Shown: in pieces, positions 1 to 16,954 of the stretch
How the letters are laid out: every line of letters begins with the position of its first letter
Numbering within the stretch: position 1 is the stretch's first letter
NCBI GenBank assembly: GCA_977017575.1
Contig: CDRNVI010000029.1
Location: 372,001 to 436,000, forward strand
Source of the DNA: Paramoeba atlantica
Taxonomy: Eukaryota > Protista > Discosea
DNA: 64,000 nucleotides
Direction: 5' to 3'
Program-made: the position numbers and the translations under genes
Notes under the pieces: generated by a model
Seen by the model: only the letters and a program-made list of their open reading frames with translations
What the model was told of the DNA's origin: nothing
Database searches by the model: none

Positions 1-359
1 ATAACATTCTGTACTGTGCATTTATCGACGACTAGCCCGTCACTTCTTTTGTTCTCTGTTTTTAGAGTCTTGTTTAGGGAAGCTTCGGCAGTGTGTACAC
101 TCGAGAAGAACTTCTTATCGGTAAGAAAGACAGCCGCGGCGTGTGTATCCGGAAAATATGACCACTGAACGCTTGAAGCGAGTCGAAGTTTCACTGGTAC
201 CGCGCGACTCTGGATGAAGTGGAAATTCTGTTGCTTCGCGCTGACAGGTCCTCGAGGAAGGCCGTCGTGCGCGTCGGGAGCAGATGTGATAACATTGGAG
301 GACATGCTCCGAGAGATAAGTTTAGTACAAAACAACAAGGTACAGAAACTGTATCTTTT
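1..359 (-). mobile_element. 5' end of an RLE non-LTR retrotransposon (copy A); ORF starts at ATG 305 and runs off the window start
   Basis: My translation from 305 (-) gives MSSNVITSAPDAHDGLPRGPVSAK...QWSYFPDTHAAAVFLTDKK...KRSDGLVVDKCTVQNV. This aligns with the N-terminus of the 11924 ORF (DLPRGSAGAK...SWLYFPDIHAAACFLTKKR...KRSDGILLEKCTLQDL). Not in the ORF track because it has no in-window stop. Confidence 0.85.
333..359 (-). other. Spliced-leader (SL) exon-like sequence at 5' end of retroelement copy A
   Basis: Minus strand reads AAAAGATACAGTTTCTGTACCTTGTTG. It matches 17/19 to the conserved kinetoplastid SL 3' core CAGTTTCTGTACTWTATTG, and its last 25 nt are identical to 11852-11876. Confidence 0.75.
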
Positions 360-10054: not shown

Positions 10055-11779
10055 ATGAAGTCGACTGCGACAGCAGCACTCTCACAGGCTCCTCTTGCGT
10101 TTTACGCCACTGAGTACGCGCTTCGTAAAAGAATACTTCCGCAGTACTCCACAAAAGATATTCGAAAAGTTTCTCAAACTGATGGCATTCAAGGATCGAG
10201 TGTTACAGGCGTAGAGAAGACTACATTAGAGAACCACTGCAGTTCTTTCTTCCGAATCAAAGAGAATTCTGTAAATGGTACTAATAAAGTACATAAGTTT
10301 GGTGCTGAACATTCCTGCGAATATTCCTTAATTTATGCTGGTGATATTTTGGAACATTTAACAAAACAAAGTCCTCTTGACATTTTTGAATTGGCGGGAT
10401 TACAACCAACTGGATCCACACAAAGCGATTTGTTGCATCTTTTTCGCCGAATCGTTGTTCATCACAAGAAAGCTCCTAGTGATGTGTTGCGCTCCTGTGC
10501 ACAAGAGATTATGGGCTACCTCAGACTGAAAGAGGTAACCAACATCCAAATGGATGACATTGTTTGTGTTATTGATGCCTTCGCTTATTTAAAAATCTTA
10601 GATGAATACTGGTCCTGTTTTCTACAAGCTGCCGAATGGGTGATAGAGCACGAAGCCGAATTGTGTAGAGCACACCTCGCACCAGTGGGATACGCATTAA
10701 TAGAGCTGTACAGTAATCACACAAAAACCCAAAAGCAAGTTTTTCAATGCCTGTTAAGCAGCATTCTGCAGAGGGCAAAATTATTTTCCACTATGTACAT
10801 TGAGCGTCATGACGAAATTAATTTCAACGAGCACCTACTAGGAAACCTGACAATTAAAGGAGGATGCACAACTCTGCTGCACGACGACGGCATATCGCTG
10901 GACCGTAAAAATCACGCGCGTCATGTTCCACAAAAAACTAGCCTACTCACAGTTCACGAAATGGCTATATTGTCCAACGCCGTTCATCTTCTCGAATTAT
11001 CACAATACGAGATGACGTTTCTTAACTCATGTACACAGCAATTGATACGTTCGTTGGATTATTGCTCTGTCATAGACCTGAGCTGCATATTATACTCCGT
11101 TGTGCAGGCCTCTCTGACAAACTCGGGAACGGCCCTGGTTGTACACGATCAGTATGCGGCAGATATCCGATCAAGTTTAGCTTCATGTGAAAGAAGGACG
11201 TATGAATTGTCCTGCAATATGGACCTTCCGTCACTTTGCTTTACACTTGACGCCTACAGTTACGTACCAGTGCTTAGTGTTGATACTTGTTCTTCATTAT
11301 GCGATAGAGTACTTCAACTGTGGACCGGTCGAATCCCAGAATCAAGCTATTCACACAGTCTTCCTGTATCTCTTATTCGTCTATTAACATTTTTTGAGTT
11401 CAAGACAGGTTTTCCTACAACGAAGGACCTTCATATTTCAATAAATACAATCAAAGATGCGACGTGCATGGTCGCGAGTACATTTTCTTCAATAGAATAT
11501 CGATTTGAGAATGATCACTTGTACTTTCTTCTCTACGAACTGCTACAATACTTTGAAAATTTTGACAAGACCTTCTGGTCTTCGAATGAGGAGACTGTAT
11601 CTATGCAACGGAACCCACAAAGTATATTATTTTCTCTCCTTGATGTGGTCATACGACGCTTGTATAAATCACTTAATAGCGTAATATCTAACCCAAGTAT
11701 GAAAAAGAAATATCTTTCTCTGCTTCAATCTGCGACAACACGAAAACTTTGCTCCCGTCATTTTTACAAAAAATGTTGA
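10055..11779 (+). CDS. Hypothetical alpha-helical repeat protein (FASTK/OPR-like, tentative)
   Basis: 574-aa ORF with recurring helical motifs such as IDLSCILYSVV and LPSLCFTLDAYS; family uncertain. Confidence 0.6.
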   Translation: MKSTATAALSQAPLAFYATEYALRKRILPQYSTKDIRKVSQTDGIQGSSVTGVEKTTLENHCSSFFRIKENSVNGTNKVHKFGAEHSCEYSLIYAGDILEHLTKQSPLDIFELAGLQPTGSTQSDLLHLFRRIVVHHKKAPSDVLRSCAQEIMGYLRLKEVTNIQMDDIVCVIDAFAYLKILDEYWSCFLQAAEWVIEHEAELCRAHLAPVGYALIELYSNHTKTQKQVFQCLLSSILQRAKLFSTMYIERHDEINFNEHLLGNLTIKGGCTTLLHDDGISLDRKNHARHVPQKTSLLTVHEMAILSNAVHLLELSQYEMTFLNSCTQQLIRSLDYCSVIDLSCILYSVVQASLTNSGTALVVHDQYAADIRSSLASCERRTYELSCNMDLPSLCFTLDAYSYVPVLSVDTCSSLCDRVLQLWTGRIPESSYSHSLPVSLIRLLTFFEFKTGFPTTKDLHISINTIKDATCMVASTFSSIEYRFENDHLYFLLYELLQYFENFDKTFWSSNEETVSMQRNPQSILFSLLDVVIRRLYKSLNSVISNPSMKKKYLSLLQSATTRKLCSRHFYKKC

Positions 11780-11851
11780 GATAATGGCATGCGGATCTAG
11801 CAACAACGATATACAAACGATGTACCATGTTTGTACAGTTTCGTCTTATTT

Positions 11852-11876
11852 AAGATACAGTTTCTGTACCTTGTTG
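11852..11876 (+). other. Spliced-leader exon-like sequence at 5' end of retroelement copy B
   Basis: AAGATACAGTTTCTGTACCTTGTTG; identical to the copy at 333-357 (-); not followed by the GT of an SL intron. Confidence 0.75.
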
Positions 11877-11923
11877 AATTAATTTTCATCTTTTGTACTA
11901 ACTGTTATCACCCCTATAGGGGC

Positions 11924-14900
11924 ATGTCACTCCACACCACTACCTCTGCCCTCCAGGCGCAAGGCGACCTCCCTCGAGGATCTGCTGGCGCAAAATCTTC
12001 ACGCAAGCATACCTTCAACTTCACAGAAAAAAGTGCGATTTCTGTAAAAATAAGACACTCAACTTCCACATCATGGCTCTATTTCCCTGACATCCACGCG
12101 GCGGCTTGTTTTCTAACCAAGAAGAGGCACTTCAATGCCGAAATTTCAGCGGAACTTTCCTTAGCACGAACCCTTGAAACAGGAGCAAAGCGATCTGATG
12201 GTATATTATTAGAAAAATGCACTTTACAAGACTTAATGAACGAGGAAGCATGCGAACATTTCGTATTCCGCGAAATTGCACCGCCACACAGGATATTCCG
12301 GCACACTAGCTGGGCGACAGCACACGCAGACGCATCTCTACAGCTCGATAAACAGTACTCTTGTCCTGGAACCCTTGGACGCGCCATCAAGAAGAAACTG
12401 GCTGGGAACAACATCTCGGGACTTGCGGCGTTCGACCTAATCCACGTCCACACTAAGGAAGTACACGATGAAGGCTCTTGGGAAAGAACTAGGATTGAGT
12501 ACGGCGAACCTTTCCTGATCCGGAAGCACAACCAGGCGGCGGCACAAGGAACGCGGACAGTGCGGGAACAACCTTGTGCCCACCGCTGCTTGAATAAACG
12601 CACCTGTCTCCACCCGTGTTGCAAAGCTGGGATGGAACCCGAGCTCACCAACAATCGTCCAGAGGAACCGGGTGGCCACGCACCAAACAGAAGTCATCCG
12701 CTGCCTCGTCCAACGGACGAACCGACCCCCAACCACGAAGCTCGACCCGGCCGTACTCAACCGTGTGCTCATCGATGTTTGAACAAGCGCATATGCCCCC
12801 ACCAATGTTGCAAGATCAGTATTGACCCCGAACCTATCGACCACCCCTCACCTCACCCAGATATGCAGAGAGCAGATAGTGCAATCCAAAAGTCTGATGC
12901 CAGGCCTGATGCTACACCATGGCTTCGAGATGAACAAACGTCTAGCACATGCGCGACACCTCGACGATCATGTAAACACATTTGCCAAAACAAGCAACAA
13001 TGTAAGCACATGTGTCGCAAGATTGGGGCAAAGATCGACCCTAGAAGACTTGAATCCCTAAACGAAGAAACAACAGTAATTGCCACCCCTCCCTCACCCG
13101 CCCCACGCACTCAGACACCGCCAGACAGGAATCTGCATCACATAACAACGTCGGAAGAACAAGAACACTCGCGCAGGCCCTGCAAGCACGTATGCCGCAA
13201 CAATGCCGAATGCAAACACCAATGTTGTAAGGAGGGAGTACTCAGCCGCCCTCAGGACGCTCGGCAGGAACCCACCCGCTGGAGCCTACGCAACCTCTTC
13301 TCGTGGAATCTGTCTAACAACGAGACAAACGGACAAGCACCTGCTGGTCACAGCGAAAGATCCGTAGCTTCTGAGCCCCAAAGGCAGGTAGAAACCAAAA
13401 TAGGCGCCGCACGGAGTTCACCACGAGATCAGCGCCACGAAAGGCGCTCCACAAATGCCTCCGAAGAAACCCGCATCAATCAGTCTCCACGACAACCAGC
13501 ACATCCACCGGTGAACAACCTAACCTCGGAACCGGCGCCAACCTCCGGAATTGAAAGTAACACACAGACGCTTACCCAGACTCTCCCACCGCGGGGCGGA
13601 CCACGGCAGACCCACGGGCCGAATGACAGCACGATCCTGAACTCACAGAGGAATAGATCTCGAAATGAAAACGTATTAGACCCCGAGACGGCTGAATACT
13701 TGTTAAGCACCACGCGTGCGATCGAAGGAGGTCGGGTCATGATAAGCCTCTCACAGGACCAATGGCAGCTGGCAATAAAGAAGGCCATGGATAGATGTAA
13801 AAAGTACTTAAAGCCTGCATCAACCCCGAGCGAAGCCCTACTACATGCCGAATTACTGACAGCTTGCATGGCGGTCTCGGTTTATGAAGTTGTACGGGAA
13901 CTTGACTCCACCAAAGGGTTCAAATTGCGCTCGAAAATTGGCCATGCGAAACGCCCCACACGACCCCTTAGCTATGACCGCTCTGCGAAGCAACTAGCAG
14001 GACACATCCGTCAACTGAAACGTACTCTTTCCTTTACCCACGGACGCTCAGAAAGGGACCGCTTGATCGGCAACATAAAAGAAGCGACCAAAGCGCACAA
14101 GCTGTACACGGAAGAAGCGAAACTAGTCAGGCAAGAACGAGAGAAACGCTGGATGATGGACAGGTTCCAAAGAAACCCTTGGACAGCAGCCGGAGAGTGT
14201 CTTGACAAGAACGAGCAACTGGTAAATCAGCCGGCAAACTTTCCAGACTGCTCGCAAGCAGCTATCGAAACATTTTTCCAAGAATCGTTAAGCACGGACA
14301 CGGAAGATCATAGTCTACCTCCAACAAACCTCCTTGGCCTGGATCTAGAGAATGCAATGGAATGGGAAGCAATCGACATACCAACCATAGCAGCGGCAAT
14401 CTCCTCGAAACGCCCCTCGGCTGCCCCAGGCTCCGATACCGTGGGAAACGCATTTCTCCGACGCTGCGAAGAGCTCTACCCGTTCATCGCGCAAGTCTTC
14501 AATGACATACTGAAGCATTCGGTCAGCCCTCCCTATTGGAAACAGGCCGTCACCTGACTCATCCATAAAGGCGGAGCTCCCAACCAATTGTCCAACTGGA
14601 GACCCATCAGGCTAACGAGCTGCCTTGGTAAGTTACTCCACTCTATTATTGGCCACAGAATCTTGAGCCATGCTGTGACGACAGGAATAATTGACACAAC
14701 CATACAAAAAGGATTTTTGCCAAACGCAAATGGAACTATCGAGCATACCCAGTCACTCTGTGAACTATTGGACTTTCAACGACAGCATAAACGACAATAC
14801 TGCCTTGGTCAATTTGACTTAAAGAACGCGTTTGGTTCTCTCCCGCACTCCATTCTCTTTCAAGTCCTAACGTGGGCAAAGGTATCACCTCAAATCATCG

Positions 14901-16428
14901 CGTACATCCGCTCCCTATACCATGATGCGACTATCCGGATCAAATGTTCGGAAGGGCTGACCAAACACATCCCCGTCAAACGAGGTGTTCTCCAGGGCGA
15001 CACACTATCCCCCGTACTATTCAATCTCGCCATGGAAGTGGTTCTACGATATCTCCGATCGAGCTTCCCTAGCTATGGTATTAAATGGGGCAACCAAGAG
15101 TCGTTCTTAAAAGCCTTTGCAGACGATCTGGCTATCATCACGAACTCGGCTGAAGAAATGCAACACGTGACGAACGCCCTGGTGAACATGCTTTCCAGGT
15201 TAGGCATGCGCCTTAACGTACCGAAATGTCGTCTCCAACACATGTCTGTAGCAGAAGGCGGATATAAGACCCACAGACCCCGTATCTTGGCATACGGTGA
15301 GAGTATTCCCAACGTTTGCGACAAAGGAAGTCAGTTCCTAGGTATGACACTCGCGCCGGGGGCCCAACAAGGGAAAGTACTGTTCAAAAGTCTACGAGCG
15401 AAGTTCTGTACTCTGAACGCGGCTGGGCTCTCACCAGCCTGTCTAAGCTTTGGTTACTCTGCACAGACACAACAGTTGAACAGATGAAAAAATCCCGTGA
15501 TCCAGCAGTGCAACAAGCGCTGAGATATCGCATCCGTCGTGAACACGACAAACGTTTTTCCGGACAAGTGCGACCAGTCGTCGAGTTGTACGACCGCAGT
15601 GGAAATCACGCATCGACACCGCAGTACATTGAACATGAATACGAAAGACATCTTTCAGAAGCTGTGCAGCGTCGAGCACCAATCGCGGGGCAGTGGTTTC
15701 GCATGGCTACAGAAGACGACCTCGCGAAAGACTTCGCTGCTGCTCTGTGCAATATTAAAAGTACGTCGCTCTCCAGATTTGCTTCATCTGTTCTGACACA
15801 GACACCGCTTCCGACCTGATCCGCCTTACACCGCTGGGGCCTCAGTTCCCACACGAACCGTAAATGCCCCATTTGCACAGAAGACGTACAAACTGTGCGC
15901 CACGTTCTAACAGGCTGCAAGGCCGCCCTGCAACAGGGGCGGTATACCTTCCGTCACAACCTCATTCTACACGCCCTTGCAGATGCTATTCGACAATCCC
16001 CCGAAACCGCACAGTGTCACTTTGACCTCGCTCACCATCAGAATCCGCAAACCTGGCTGAGCGGGCAAGAAACGTCCCTCCGACCTGATGGATGGGTCCA
16101 ACTTAAGAACGGTTCTGAGTTCATACTCGAACTGACATCTCCGTGGGAGGAAAACTTTATCTCCTCACACGAACGGAAGATGCATAAGTATGGACATATG
16201 TATCTACAAAGGAAAATGTCGAACCCCGCCACATTTCTCCTGGCCATTGAAGTAGGAGCCAGGGGAAAGCTCAACAGCTCAACTCGAGCACTGAACTCCC
16301 TTTTTGGTGGAAACAAGGCCACCGCCTCGCGATGTCGGCAGCATATGGTAACAAGAGCCCTTAGTGGGAGTTTCAAAAATTTTAATGATCGCGACATTGA
16401 GCAGTGGAGTGAGGGCACGTGCTGGTGA
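11924..16428 (+). pseudogene. Single retrotransposon ORF (Zn-finger repeats, RT, CCHC, RLE) with two in-frame TGA and a deletion/frameshift
   Basis: In-frame TGA at 14555-14557 and 15817-15819; frame change with apparently missing post-RT sequence near 15430-15480. Confidence 0.88.
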
Positions 16429-16954
16429 AGAGTTTTAAAAACCTAGGAGAAACTCGTTTTGTGCGAGGATTGCGTGCTAGTCATGCATCTTCTAGGTATC
16501 AATCTCTGCAGTTTAACTGCATGAATATCAAAAAAAAATCTCTCAAAAAAAGATAGAAAAAATTCTATTAAGTGGAATTAAATAAGTAAAAGGAACAAAA
16601 CTAAATACTATAGTTTACTATCGTTTTGTTCTTTTTTCTTACAGGAGCGATACTTGTTTTACAACGAGACGGCCTTTTTGCTACATTTTTCGTGCACGCT
16701 AACCCACGCTATCCTAGCGTTTACGGGCACTTCCTCTTAGCGATACTTTTGATGGGATTAACTCTTGCCGCGGATTGGCACTAATTTGTGACCCACCAAT
16801 GGCTTTTCTTCACGGAAGCCGGGTAAAGCTAGTGTAGGGGGCGGTGTATGATTTATGCTTATATGAGATGTTTATATGGGTATGTCTCTATGTTTTTATG
16901 AGATTATTTTCATCTTCTGAGCTCAATTTGACTTTAGTTTCAATTTTTTAGTTG

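What the first reader, a model, noticed from the sequence alone, without database searches (positions are those of the whole stretch)
11852..11926. Non-LTR retrotransposon family whose copies begin with a spliced-leader exon fragment
Seen: both copies start with an identical 25-nt sequence matching 17/19 of the kinetoplastid SL core CAGTTTCTGTACTWTATTG. It ends exactly where an SL exon ends (TTG), has no GT intron after it, and joins the UTR at different points (27 vs 47 nt from ATG). Known: CRE/SLACS/CZAR in trypanosomatids and NeSL in nematodes insert into SL RNA genes. Inference: this HERO/NeSL-like family, which is not CRE-like, either independently targets SL genes and carries target sequence to dispersed sites, or picks up the SL by trans-splicing or template switching each cycle. 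Either would be an SL-coupled retrotransposition system distinct from the known CRE clade.
Basis: partly seen in the sequence, partly recalled or inferred. Interest (0 to 1): 0.9.

Follow-up and report, generated by a model that had tools for sequence, protein, structure and literature searches.

The report
Retrotransposon headed by host spliced leader
Two broken copies of a jumping gene in this kinetoplastid-type genome each begin with a DNA copy of the tail of the cell's own spliced leader, as does every full-length relative, so the leader reached them through RNA and not by landing in leader genes.

Summary
The 25-mer is bases 14-38 of this organism's own 38-base spliced leader (SL). I found about 40 SL RNA genes in which the same exon is followed by a trypanosomatid-like GTATGAGAAGC intron.

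The window holds a frameshifted 4.7-kb copy (11852-16538, +) of a single-ORF non-LTR retrotransposon with a restriction-like endonuclease (RLE). It also holds the 5' end of a divergent copy (358-1, -).

All 19 independent 5'-complete copies, in five subfamilies, carry the tag. The subfamilies are only 54-71% identical in the ORF start. The tag matches the host SL, always ends at the exon's last base, and most often starts at SL base 11. No copy lies in an SL gene.

The SL is therefore RNA-derived and kept equal to the host SL, not carried-over target DNA. How it is renewed is unresolved: the moved junctions lack an AG acceptor.

This is not special to this family. The core 20-mer occurs 743 times in the genome and heads several families, including a SINE.

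This scan has already reported the same phenomenon many times on other pieces of this genome. I found no report of it in papers for kinetoplastid mobile elements. The clade claim (HERO/NeSL-like, not CRE) was not tested against references.

The parts
11834..11842 (+). Stray SL fragment (TACAGTTTC, SL bases 18-26) 9 nt upstream of the tag. It is a 5' stutter of the kind seen in other copies (L064, L067, L076).
   Evidence: Read directly. Comparable partial SL pieces lie upstream of tags.
11852..11876 (+). SL tag of copy 1. It is identical to bases 14-38 of the host's 38-base SL exon and ends at the exon's last base.
   Evidence: SL RNA genes with exon plus GTATGAGAAGC intron.
11877..11923 (+). 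47-nt 5' UTR. It starts AATTAATTTTC, holds GTACTAAC, and has a small CCCC-N4-GGGG hairpin just before the ATG.
   Evidence: The UTR is 9-55% diverged between subfamilies while the tag is invariant.
11924..14557 (+). First ORF piece (877 aa). It covers the N-terminal region with four Cys/His clusters and the start of the RT. It is closed by a stop where intact relatives read on.
   Evidence: No Pfam hit, so no AP endonuclease and no Ulp1 protease. Intact relatives have open frames of 1490-1860 aa.
14588..15487 (+). Reverse transcriptase piece (299 aa), in another frame.
   Evidence: Pfam RVT_1 at E 2.7e-31. R2Bm 8gh6 at E 9e-21.
15835..16428 (+). C-terminal CCHC knuckle (CPIC...H...C) and restriction-like endonuclease (RPD ... 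ELT ... K..KY), in a third frame.
   Evidence: Read. This piece aligns to the C-termini of about 50 of the RT-matched proteins. It gave no PDB hit by sequence.
16429..16538 (+). 3' UTR with the conserved tail ATCTCTGCAG-N8-GCATGA.., ending in a run of nine A (16530-16538).
   Evidence: Homology to other copies stops at window bases 16530-16538. The same tail motif ends L090, L092 and the SINE.
333..358 (-). SL tag of copy 2 (SL bases 13-38).
1..332 (-). Copy 2, a divergent subfamily: 27-nt UTR (332-306) and the ORF start (ATG 305-303), running off the window.
   Evidence: A closer relative with a longer UTR is L090:4971-9130.

Best explanation
Window 11852-16538 is a decayed copy, and 358-1 the head of a second copy, of a single-ORF non-LTR retrotransposon with a reverse transcriptase and a C-terminal restriction-like endonuclease (R2-group type).

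Its first 25-26 bases are a DNA copy of the 3' part of the host's own spliced leader. The leader entered through RNA. The template that was reverse-transcribed carried, or was extended onto, genuine SL sequence joined flush at the exon's last base. It did not come from integration into SL RNA genes.

The tag is kept equal to the host SL over many rounds, so it is renewed or refreshed from host SL RNA rather than passively inherited.

The usual loss of SL bases 1-10 is a signature of this element's own machinery. The SINE that shares its 3' tail shows the same limit, whereas other families in the same genome keep the SL from base 1-3.

Shown: SL identity, presence in the whole family, flush and moving junctions, absence from SL genes.

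Inferred: the renewal step. My odds within this explanation:
- About 40%: reverse transcriptase switching within or next to the tag onto other SL-bearing RNAs.
- About 35%: fresh trans-splicing in each round.
- The remainder: a selected, inherited 5' module.
For: 1. The SL exon is defined by about 40 SL RNA genes, in which the exon is followed by GTATGAGAAGC. They lie in 2.56-kb tandem arrays on C97 and C107, among others.

2. 19 of 19 independent 5'-complete copies in five subfamilies carry the tag. One lineage has a single T>C change.

3. The subfamilies are 54-71% identical over the first 600 nt of the ORF. Their tags are 16/16 identical in all, and 28/28 where present.

4. The tag always ends at SL base 38, but the UTR starts at six or more different points. 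Shortened forms arose separately in subfamilies A, B and D.

5. Tag starts peak at base 11 in the LINE (9 of 19) and in the SINE (8 of 23), against bases 1-3 in other families. The LINE and the SINE share the 3' tail motif.

6. Of 70 SINE copies with a tag from base 11, 11 reach base 9 and 5 reach base 6. Chance gives about 4.4 and 0.07. Some source RNAs therefore had a longer, probably full, SL.

7. Signs of trans-splicing before copying:
- Tandems of SL plus SL bases 23-38, joined after the AG inside an older tag: 14 exact and 3 near matches.
- A SINE copy with the SL joined exactly after its internal GCTAG (L087/L088).

8. Signs of template switching: partial SL stutters upstream of tags (window 11834-11842; L007, L010, L025, L064, L067, L076). 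There is also a retro-copy of unspliced SL RNA with an A tail (L045).

9. No SL or intron sequence lies at the 3' flanks.
Against: - No RNA data could be laid. No listed run is on record as RNA, and the one guessed RNA run gave nothing. No SL-bearing transcript of the element has been seen.
- None of the moved junctions is preceded by AG in the longer UTR (the preceding bases are TC, CA, TC, TG, AA/AC, TT). The canonical acceptor predicted in subfamily A (TATAG just before GGGCATG) is never the junction.
- No tag-less source copy with a normal acceptor was found among the 28 matches.
- If old tags were routinely re-spliced at their internal AG, tandem relics should be common. There are about 17 against about 700 tags.
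- Only 88 loci of the genome could be read.
Confidence: 0.75

Rival explanations
1. Master copies sit in SL RNA genes, inserted right after the exon. They are transcribed from the SL promoter as SL-plus-element RNA, and all dispersed copies are their dead-end offspring. This is a CRE-like lifestyle with leaky targeting.
For: - It would give a full SL joined flush without any AG acceptor.
- One SL gene start with native upstream sequence (C41:280831) has no matching exon-intron hit.
- Two units of the C74 array are 7.3 kb apart instead of about 2.6-2.7 kb, which leaves room for an insert of about 4.6-4.7 kb.
- The modal tag, the last 28 bases of the exon, equals the part of the exon that lies downstream of the CZAR/SLACS insertion point, between bases 11 and 12 of a 39-base SL (PMC5814959).
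Against: - 34 of 35 SL genes with native upstream sequence keep the exon-intron joint.
- In the C74 units both the promoter-exon and the exon-intron joints are intact, so that insert does not follow the exon.
- No 5' end, 3' end or RT match of this family lies in an SL array. The nearest RT is only 43% identical, lies about 2 kb away, and is on the opposite strand.
- Six or more junction variants in several families would each need their own master copy.
Confidence: 0.1
2. The tag is an inherited, functional 5' module, for example an internal promoter or processing signal like Pr77 of L1Tc/ingi. It was captured once from an SL-bearing RNA and is kept identical to the SL by selection. The element's RNA starts at about SL base 11.
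For: - The start at base 11 is sharp in both the LINE and the SINE.
- No upstream flank is ever carried along.
- The main junction (SL followed by AATTA...) is stable within subfamilies.
- Kinetoplastid LINEs are known to carry an internal 5' promoter/ribozyme (PMC5814959, PMC1874656).
Against: - The junction has moved at least five times, always exactly at SL base 38.
- Some tags extend to base 6 or beyond, far above chance.
- Unrelated families with different machinery carry full SLs.
- No known ribozyme family matches 11700-12300.
- Perfect identity of 28 bases to the host SL has no obvious selective reason in a promoter.
Confidence: 0.1
3. The tag belongs to the target, not the element. 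The endonuclease cuts DNA right after pre-existing genomic SL copies, and the element lands behind them.
For: - It would explain flush joints with variable element 5' ends.
- In L091 and L076 a slightly mutated SL copy precedes a perfect partial one.
Against: - It needs a solitary SL tag at every one of 19 unrelated sites, including ordinary intergenic DNA in this window.
- What follows the element is never an SL intron or another element's UTR.
- 18 of 19 tags are mutation-free, so they are no older than the elements behind them.
Confidence: 0.05

Closest known systems
CRE clade (SLACS, CZAR, CRE1/CRE2) of trypanosomatids
   Same: Kinetoplastid host. Single-ORF RLE-type non-LTR element with an A-rich 3' end and an association with the spliced leader. 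The modal tag length (28 bases from the exon end) equals the stretch downstream of the CRE insertion point.
   Different: CRE elements sit inside SL RNA genes between exon bases 11 and 12 (PMC5814959, PMC12278014). These copies are dispersed in unique DNA, and the SL piece is at their own 5' end, flush with the exon end. No SLACS- or CRE-named protein appeared among the listed relatives. No CRE reference was at hand for a direct test.
NeSL-1 / Utopia (NeSL clade)
   Same: RLE-type element. Several of the nearer outside relatives of this lineage carry the Ulp1-type protease typical of NeSL/Utopia (PF02902). NeSL-1 is also linked to a spliced leader.
   Different: NeSL-1 inserts into SL1 genes. 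This element has no protease domain and no SL-gene insertions.
HERO clade
   Same: RLE-type element with largely non-specific insertion. Two insertions in (TG)n repeats were seen, one of a related element and one of the SINE (L023, L054). This recalls the microsatellite preference of some HERO-related families (PMC4640811).
   Different: The clade is defined by RT phylogeny, which I could not run against named references. HERO elements are not known to carry an SL head.
Dinoflagellate retrogenes with relict DinoSL
   Same: DNA-encoded spliced leader at the 5' end of retrocopies. Tandem truncated leaders arise from re-splicing at an AG inside the old leader (PMC5585692, PMC6050394; here).
   Different: There the phenomenon concerns cellular genes. 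Here it concerns autonomous retrotransposons and their SINE, hundreds of copies. Relict tandems are the exception, and the usual junction has no AG.
Chimeric retrocopies made by LINE template jumps (U6-L1, Magnaporthe MGL chimeras) and R2 5'-junction formation
   Same: A host RNA is fused flush to the 5' side of an element copy. There are stutters and short fillers at the joint (PMC4476161, PMC2104539). L1Tc RT is reported to switch templates readily (PMC5814959).
   Different: In those cases the chimeras are rare by-products. Here the host-RNA head is on every full-length copy of the family.

Membership tests
RLE-type (R2-group) non-LTR retrotransposon | Reverse transcriptase of the non-LTR type | tested here: met
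   Pfam RVT_1 at E 2.7e-31. Best solved relatives are R2Bm and L1 ORF2p, E 1e-21 to 1e-19.
RLE-type (R2-group) non-LTR retrotransposon | C-terminal CCHC knuckle plus PD-(D/E)xK restriction-like endonuclease, and no AP endonuclease | tested here: met
   CPIC..H....C, RPD, ELT and K..KY were read. The piece aligns to the C-termini of about 50 RT-matched proteins. The 877-aa N-terminal piece has no Exo_endo_phos hit. The RLE piece gave no PDB hit by sequence.
CRE clade (SLACS/CZAR/CRE) | Site-specific insertion in SL RNA genes between exon bases 11 and 12 | tested here: not met
   Copies lie in unique DNA with unrelated flanks. 34 of 35 SL genes are uninterrupted. No family match lies in an SL array.
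CRE clade (SLACS/CZAR/CRE) | RT groups with SLACS/CRE in a phylogeny | not testable with these tools
   No named CRE reference sequence could be obtained. None appeared by name among the listed relatives.
NeSL clade | Insertion in SL (or U2) genes, and in NeSL proper an N-terminal Ulp1-like protease | tested here: not met
   No Peptidase_C48 hit in the N-terminal piece and no SL-gene insertions. Some outside relatives do carry PF02902.
HERO clade | Placement by RT phylogeny; mostly non-specific insertion | not testable with these tools
   Dispersed insertion is consistent with HERO. No HERO reference was at hand.
Retroposition of SL-trans-spliced RNA (dinoflagellate type) | DNA-encoded leader that ends exactly at the exon end at the 5' end of the copy, with an A run at the 3' end | tested here: met
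Retroposition of SL-trans-spliced RNA (dinoflagellate type) | Junction corresponds to an AG acceptor in the source, with relict leaders from repeated rounds | tested here: inconclusive
   Relict tandems exist in the genome, and one SINE copy is joined after an AG. The junctions of this family have no AG, and no tag-less source copy was found.

The most novel reading that the evidence does not exclude
The LINE and its SINE form an SL-dependent retrotransposition system. In it the 5' head is rebuilt in each round by the reverse transcriptase switching onto host SL-bearing RNA.

The endonuclease would still recognise the ancestral CRE-type site in the SL, 28 bases from the exon end. It would therefore trim its own product there. 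That would make this lineage a bridge between SL-gene-targeting elements (CRE, NeSL) and freely dispersed elements.
Probability: 0.15. Interest if true: 0.8.

Novelty: new variant of a known kind. Interest (0 to 1): 0.6.

Why it matters
Kinetoplastid mRNAs need the capped spliced leader to be translated, and their retrotransposons have no promoters of the usual kind. A whole set of retrotransposon families whose DNA copies begin with the host leader shows how mobile elements cope with a genome that is transcribed in long units and trans-spliced.

It also gives a built-in mark of RNA-mediated copying, as the DinoSL does for dinoflagellate retrogenes. Here the mark sits on the elements that supply the reverse transcriptase.

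The sharp family-specific limit at SL base 11 and the AG-less moving junctions point to a step that is not yet understood: template switching, unusual splicing, or processing. That step can be tested directly with long-read RNA data and a marked element.

Tried and rejected
- RNA evidence: no listed run is on record as RNA. The one guessed RNA run (X5) laid nothing, and the other runs are contigs that cannot show RNA ends. No empty allele of the copy-1 site appeared among the joints.
I did not try to get the letters another way. Target-site duplications could therefore be looked for only in copy 1, L090 and L092, and none was seen.
Exact patterns were used instead.
- Rfam with permissive thresholds found no ribozyme or other RNA family in 11700-12300.
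- The small hairpin before the ATG shows no compensatory changes.
- The ESM Atlas gave only generic RT clusters.
- A word-indexed protein search with the 299-aa RT piece returned only fragments, because of the length window.
- The RLE piece had no PDB match by sequence.
- The old SLACS and CZAR papers (PMC330328, PMC361791) are not held, so their duplication lengths rest on my memory and are not used as evidence.
- A full-text search for the 13-base SL tail returned only one unrelated paper.
- AAGATA as a target-site duplication of copy 1: rejected. The 3' copy lies 13 nt beyond the end of the element.
- Routine re-splicing at the AG inside old tags followed by collapse of the repeat: rejected as the main route, because relics are rare.

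Full report
**What is there**

The core 20-mer of the reported sequence occurs twice in the window, at 11857-11876 (+) and 352-333 (-). None is expected by chance.

Copy 1 runs from 11852 to an A9 run at 16530-16538. Homology to other copies stops there. It contains:
- a 47-nt UTR;
- an 877-aa first ORF piece with four Cys/His clusters and no Pfam hit;
- a 299-aa RT piece (RVT_1, E 2.7e-31);
- a C-terminal piece with a CCHC knuckle and RPD/ELT/K..KY endonuclease motifs.

The three coding pieces lie in three frames, so this copy is broken. Relatives elsewhere in the genome have open frames of 1490-1860 aa. One of them, of the same subfamily, is at C3:862280. Copy 2 is the first 358 bases of a divergent subfamily and runs off the window.

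**Is it the spliced leader?**

Yes, and it is the organism's own. Searching the genome for the tag followed by GTA found tandem genes. In them a 38-base exon, AACTTTAACGATAAAGATACAGTTTCTGTACCTTGTTG, is followed by GTATGAGAAGC..., the same intron start as in trypanosomatid SL RNA genes.

There are about 40 such exon-intron joints, mostly in 2.56-kb arrays on C97 and C107 and smaller groups on C74, C11 and C3. The 20-mer core occurs 743 times in the 45.7-Mb assembly, so about 700 copies lie outside SL genes.

**The family**

A search with the first 600 bases behind the tag found 28 matches. After removing haplotig duplicates, and adding the window's second copy, the L023 element and a copy from a second assembly of the same or a very close organism (ENA ERZ24900291, L090), I had 19 independent 5'-complete copies. 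These copies fall into five subfamilies. L023, with its T-run leader, is a related element counted here by its GTACTA motif.

- Every one carries the tag. One lineage, present in three duplicated places, has a single T>C change.
- The subfamilies are only 54-71% identical over the first 600 nt of the ORF and 45-91% in the UTR.
- The last 16 tag bases are identical in all ten pairs, and all 28 where present.

A neutral inherited segment would have diverged, so the tag is either refreshed from the host SL or under very strong selection.

**The junction**

The tag always ends at exon base 38. What follows differs.
- The long form starts AATTA(A)TTTTC....
- Shortened forms lack 10-17 bases of UTR. 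They arose separately in subfamily A (two forms), B (two forms, one of them at two unrelated sites) and D (window copy 2 against L090).
- In the long UTRs the bases before these points are TC, CA, TC, TG, AA/AC and TT, never AG.
- The canonical site predicted in subfamily A (TATAG before GGGCATG) is never used as a junction.
- No tag-less copy with a normal acceptor appeared.

**The tag start**

- In this LINE the tag starts most often at SL base 11 (9 of 19; range 9-23).
- A 590-bp non-coding element that begins with the tag followed by GTACATTTTGCTAG shows the same peak (8 of 23).
- That element ends in the same tail motif as the LINE (ATCTCTGC.. N8 G[CT]ATGA..). It is therefore very likely this LINE's SINE.
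- Other families in the same genome keep the SL from base 1-3 and are usually preceded by another element's poly(A).

The loss of bases 1-10 is therefore a mark of this machinery, not of the RNA pool.

Genome-wide, 70 SINE copies have the tag from base 11. Eleven reach base 9 and five reach base 6, against about 4.4 and 0.07 expected by chance. Some templates therefore had a longer, probably complete, SL.

**Traces of both candidate processes**

Trans-splicing before copying:
- 14 exact and 3 near matches to SL followed by SL bases 23-38. This is a new SL spliced after the AG inside an older tag. Two further matches are of the type that uses the other AG.
- A SINE copy (L087/L088) has the SL joined exactly after its internal GCTAG.

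Template switching:
- Stray partial SL pieces with short fillers lie upstream of tags. Examples are window 11834-11842 and L007, L010, L025, L064, L067 and L076.
- Relics such as TACCTTGTTG do not follow an AG (L008, L091).
- A retro-copy of unspliced SL RNA carries an A tail (L045).

**SL-gene targeting**

- Of 35 SL genes with their native upstream sequence, 34 coincide with an intact exon-intron joint.
- The exception, C41:280831, could not be read.
- Two 7.3-kb units in the C74 array hold an insert of about 4.6-4.7 kb, but their promoter-exon and exon-intron joints are intact.
- No 5', 3' or RT match of this family lies in an array. A 43%-identical RT lies about 2 kb from SL genes on C24/C74, on the other strand.
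- The 3' flanks of copy 1, L090 and L092 show no SL, no intron and no obvious duplication.

**A coincidence worth noting**

CZAR and SLACS insert between bases 11 and 12 of a 39-base SL (PMC5814959). That is 28 bases from the exon end, the same distance as the modal tag start here. This may be chance. It may instead mean that the endonuclease still recognises that point.

**Classification**

The element is an RLE-type non-LTR retrotransposon.
- The RT piece finds 73 representatives at E<=1e-30 and 4688 at E<=1e-10.
- About 50 of the fetched relatives share the C-terminal endonuclease piece.
- The nearest named relatives are from nematodes, a tardigrade, a brine shrimp, arachnids and turtles.
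- Some unnamed relatives carry Ulp1 protease or Myb domains.
- No protein named SLACS or CRE was listed.

Without reference sequences I cannot place the element in HERO, NeSL, R4, R2 or CRE.

**Literature**

Searches found SL-tagged retrogenes in dinoflagellates, and CRE/NeSL as SL-gene-specific elements. I found no report of retrotransposons headed by the SL in kinetoplastids. Earlier agents of this scan reported the same phenomenon on many other pieces of this genome, and also left the renewal step open.

**Limits**

- There is no RNA evidence.
- Only 88 loci of the genome could be read.
- Repeat counts are lower bounds.

Noticed in passing
L005-L030 (for example L015, L017, L030): In other families the SL tag is complete from base 1-3 and directly preceded by a long poly(A) that ends another element (recurrent ...TTATTAATTGC-A(n)). 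These are head-to-tail joints, as expected from jumps from the 5' end of one RNA to the tail of another, or from insertion at A tails.
   Followed up: partly
L001-L030, first bases of full-length tags: SL base 2 (A in the gene) reads A, T or C in different retrocopies, and many tags start at base 3. This may record miscopying or stalling at the modified cap-proximal bases.
   Followed up: no
L045 (G000:C6 near 27079): A retro-copy of the unspliced SL RNA (exon from base 3, plus intron to ...GGGGCTT) with an A6 tail, next to a tandem repeat. Five more exon-intron hits lack the native upstream sequence (C11:274167, C24:3426, C83:133019, C87:74382, C87:106940).
   Followed up: partly
G000:C41:280831-280859: An SL gene upstream region plus exon start with no matching exon-intron joint in the genome-wide list. 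This may be an interrupted SL gene or an element behind an SL promoter.
   Followed up: no
G000:C74:106906-121512: Two SL array units are 7.3 kb apart instead of about 2.6-2.7 kb, so each holds an insert of about 4.6-4.7 kb. No RT of this family was listed there.
   Followed up: no
L023 and L054: An RLE-type element and a SINE copy each sit directly behind a long (TG)n run, which hints at a microsatellite preference.
   Followed up: no
G000:C11:3817 and 6710; C97:23431 and 25975: Variant SL genes. One type has TGTCCC instead of TGTACC, 297 bp behind a normal gene. The other has AAAGGTAC instead of AAAGATAC.
   Followed up: no
window 11852-16538 versus G000:C16:348647-353333: The same insertion with the same flanks is on contig C16 (99-100% identical). 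There the RT lies in a 1228-aa open frame, against 309 aa here. The two are probably haplotigs that differ by a frameshift.
   Followed up: partly
L001-L004 (G000:C1:9752-25049): A 5.09-kb tandem repeat in which a full SL is flanked on both sides by the same 31-nt UTR piece (TTTCTTATTTGTATTTCGCACGAATAAAAGT).
   Followed up: no
Upstream flanks of 42 LINE/SINE insertions: T at position -1 in 20 of 42 and A at -2 in 19 of 42. This is a possible weak target or junction preference.
   Followed up: partly
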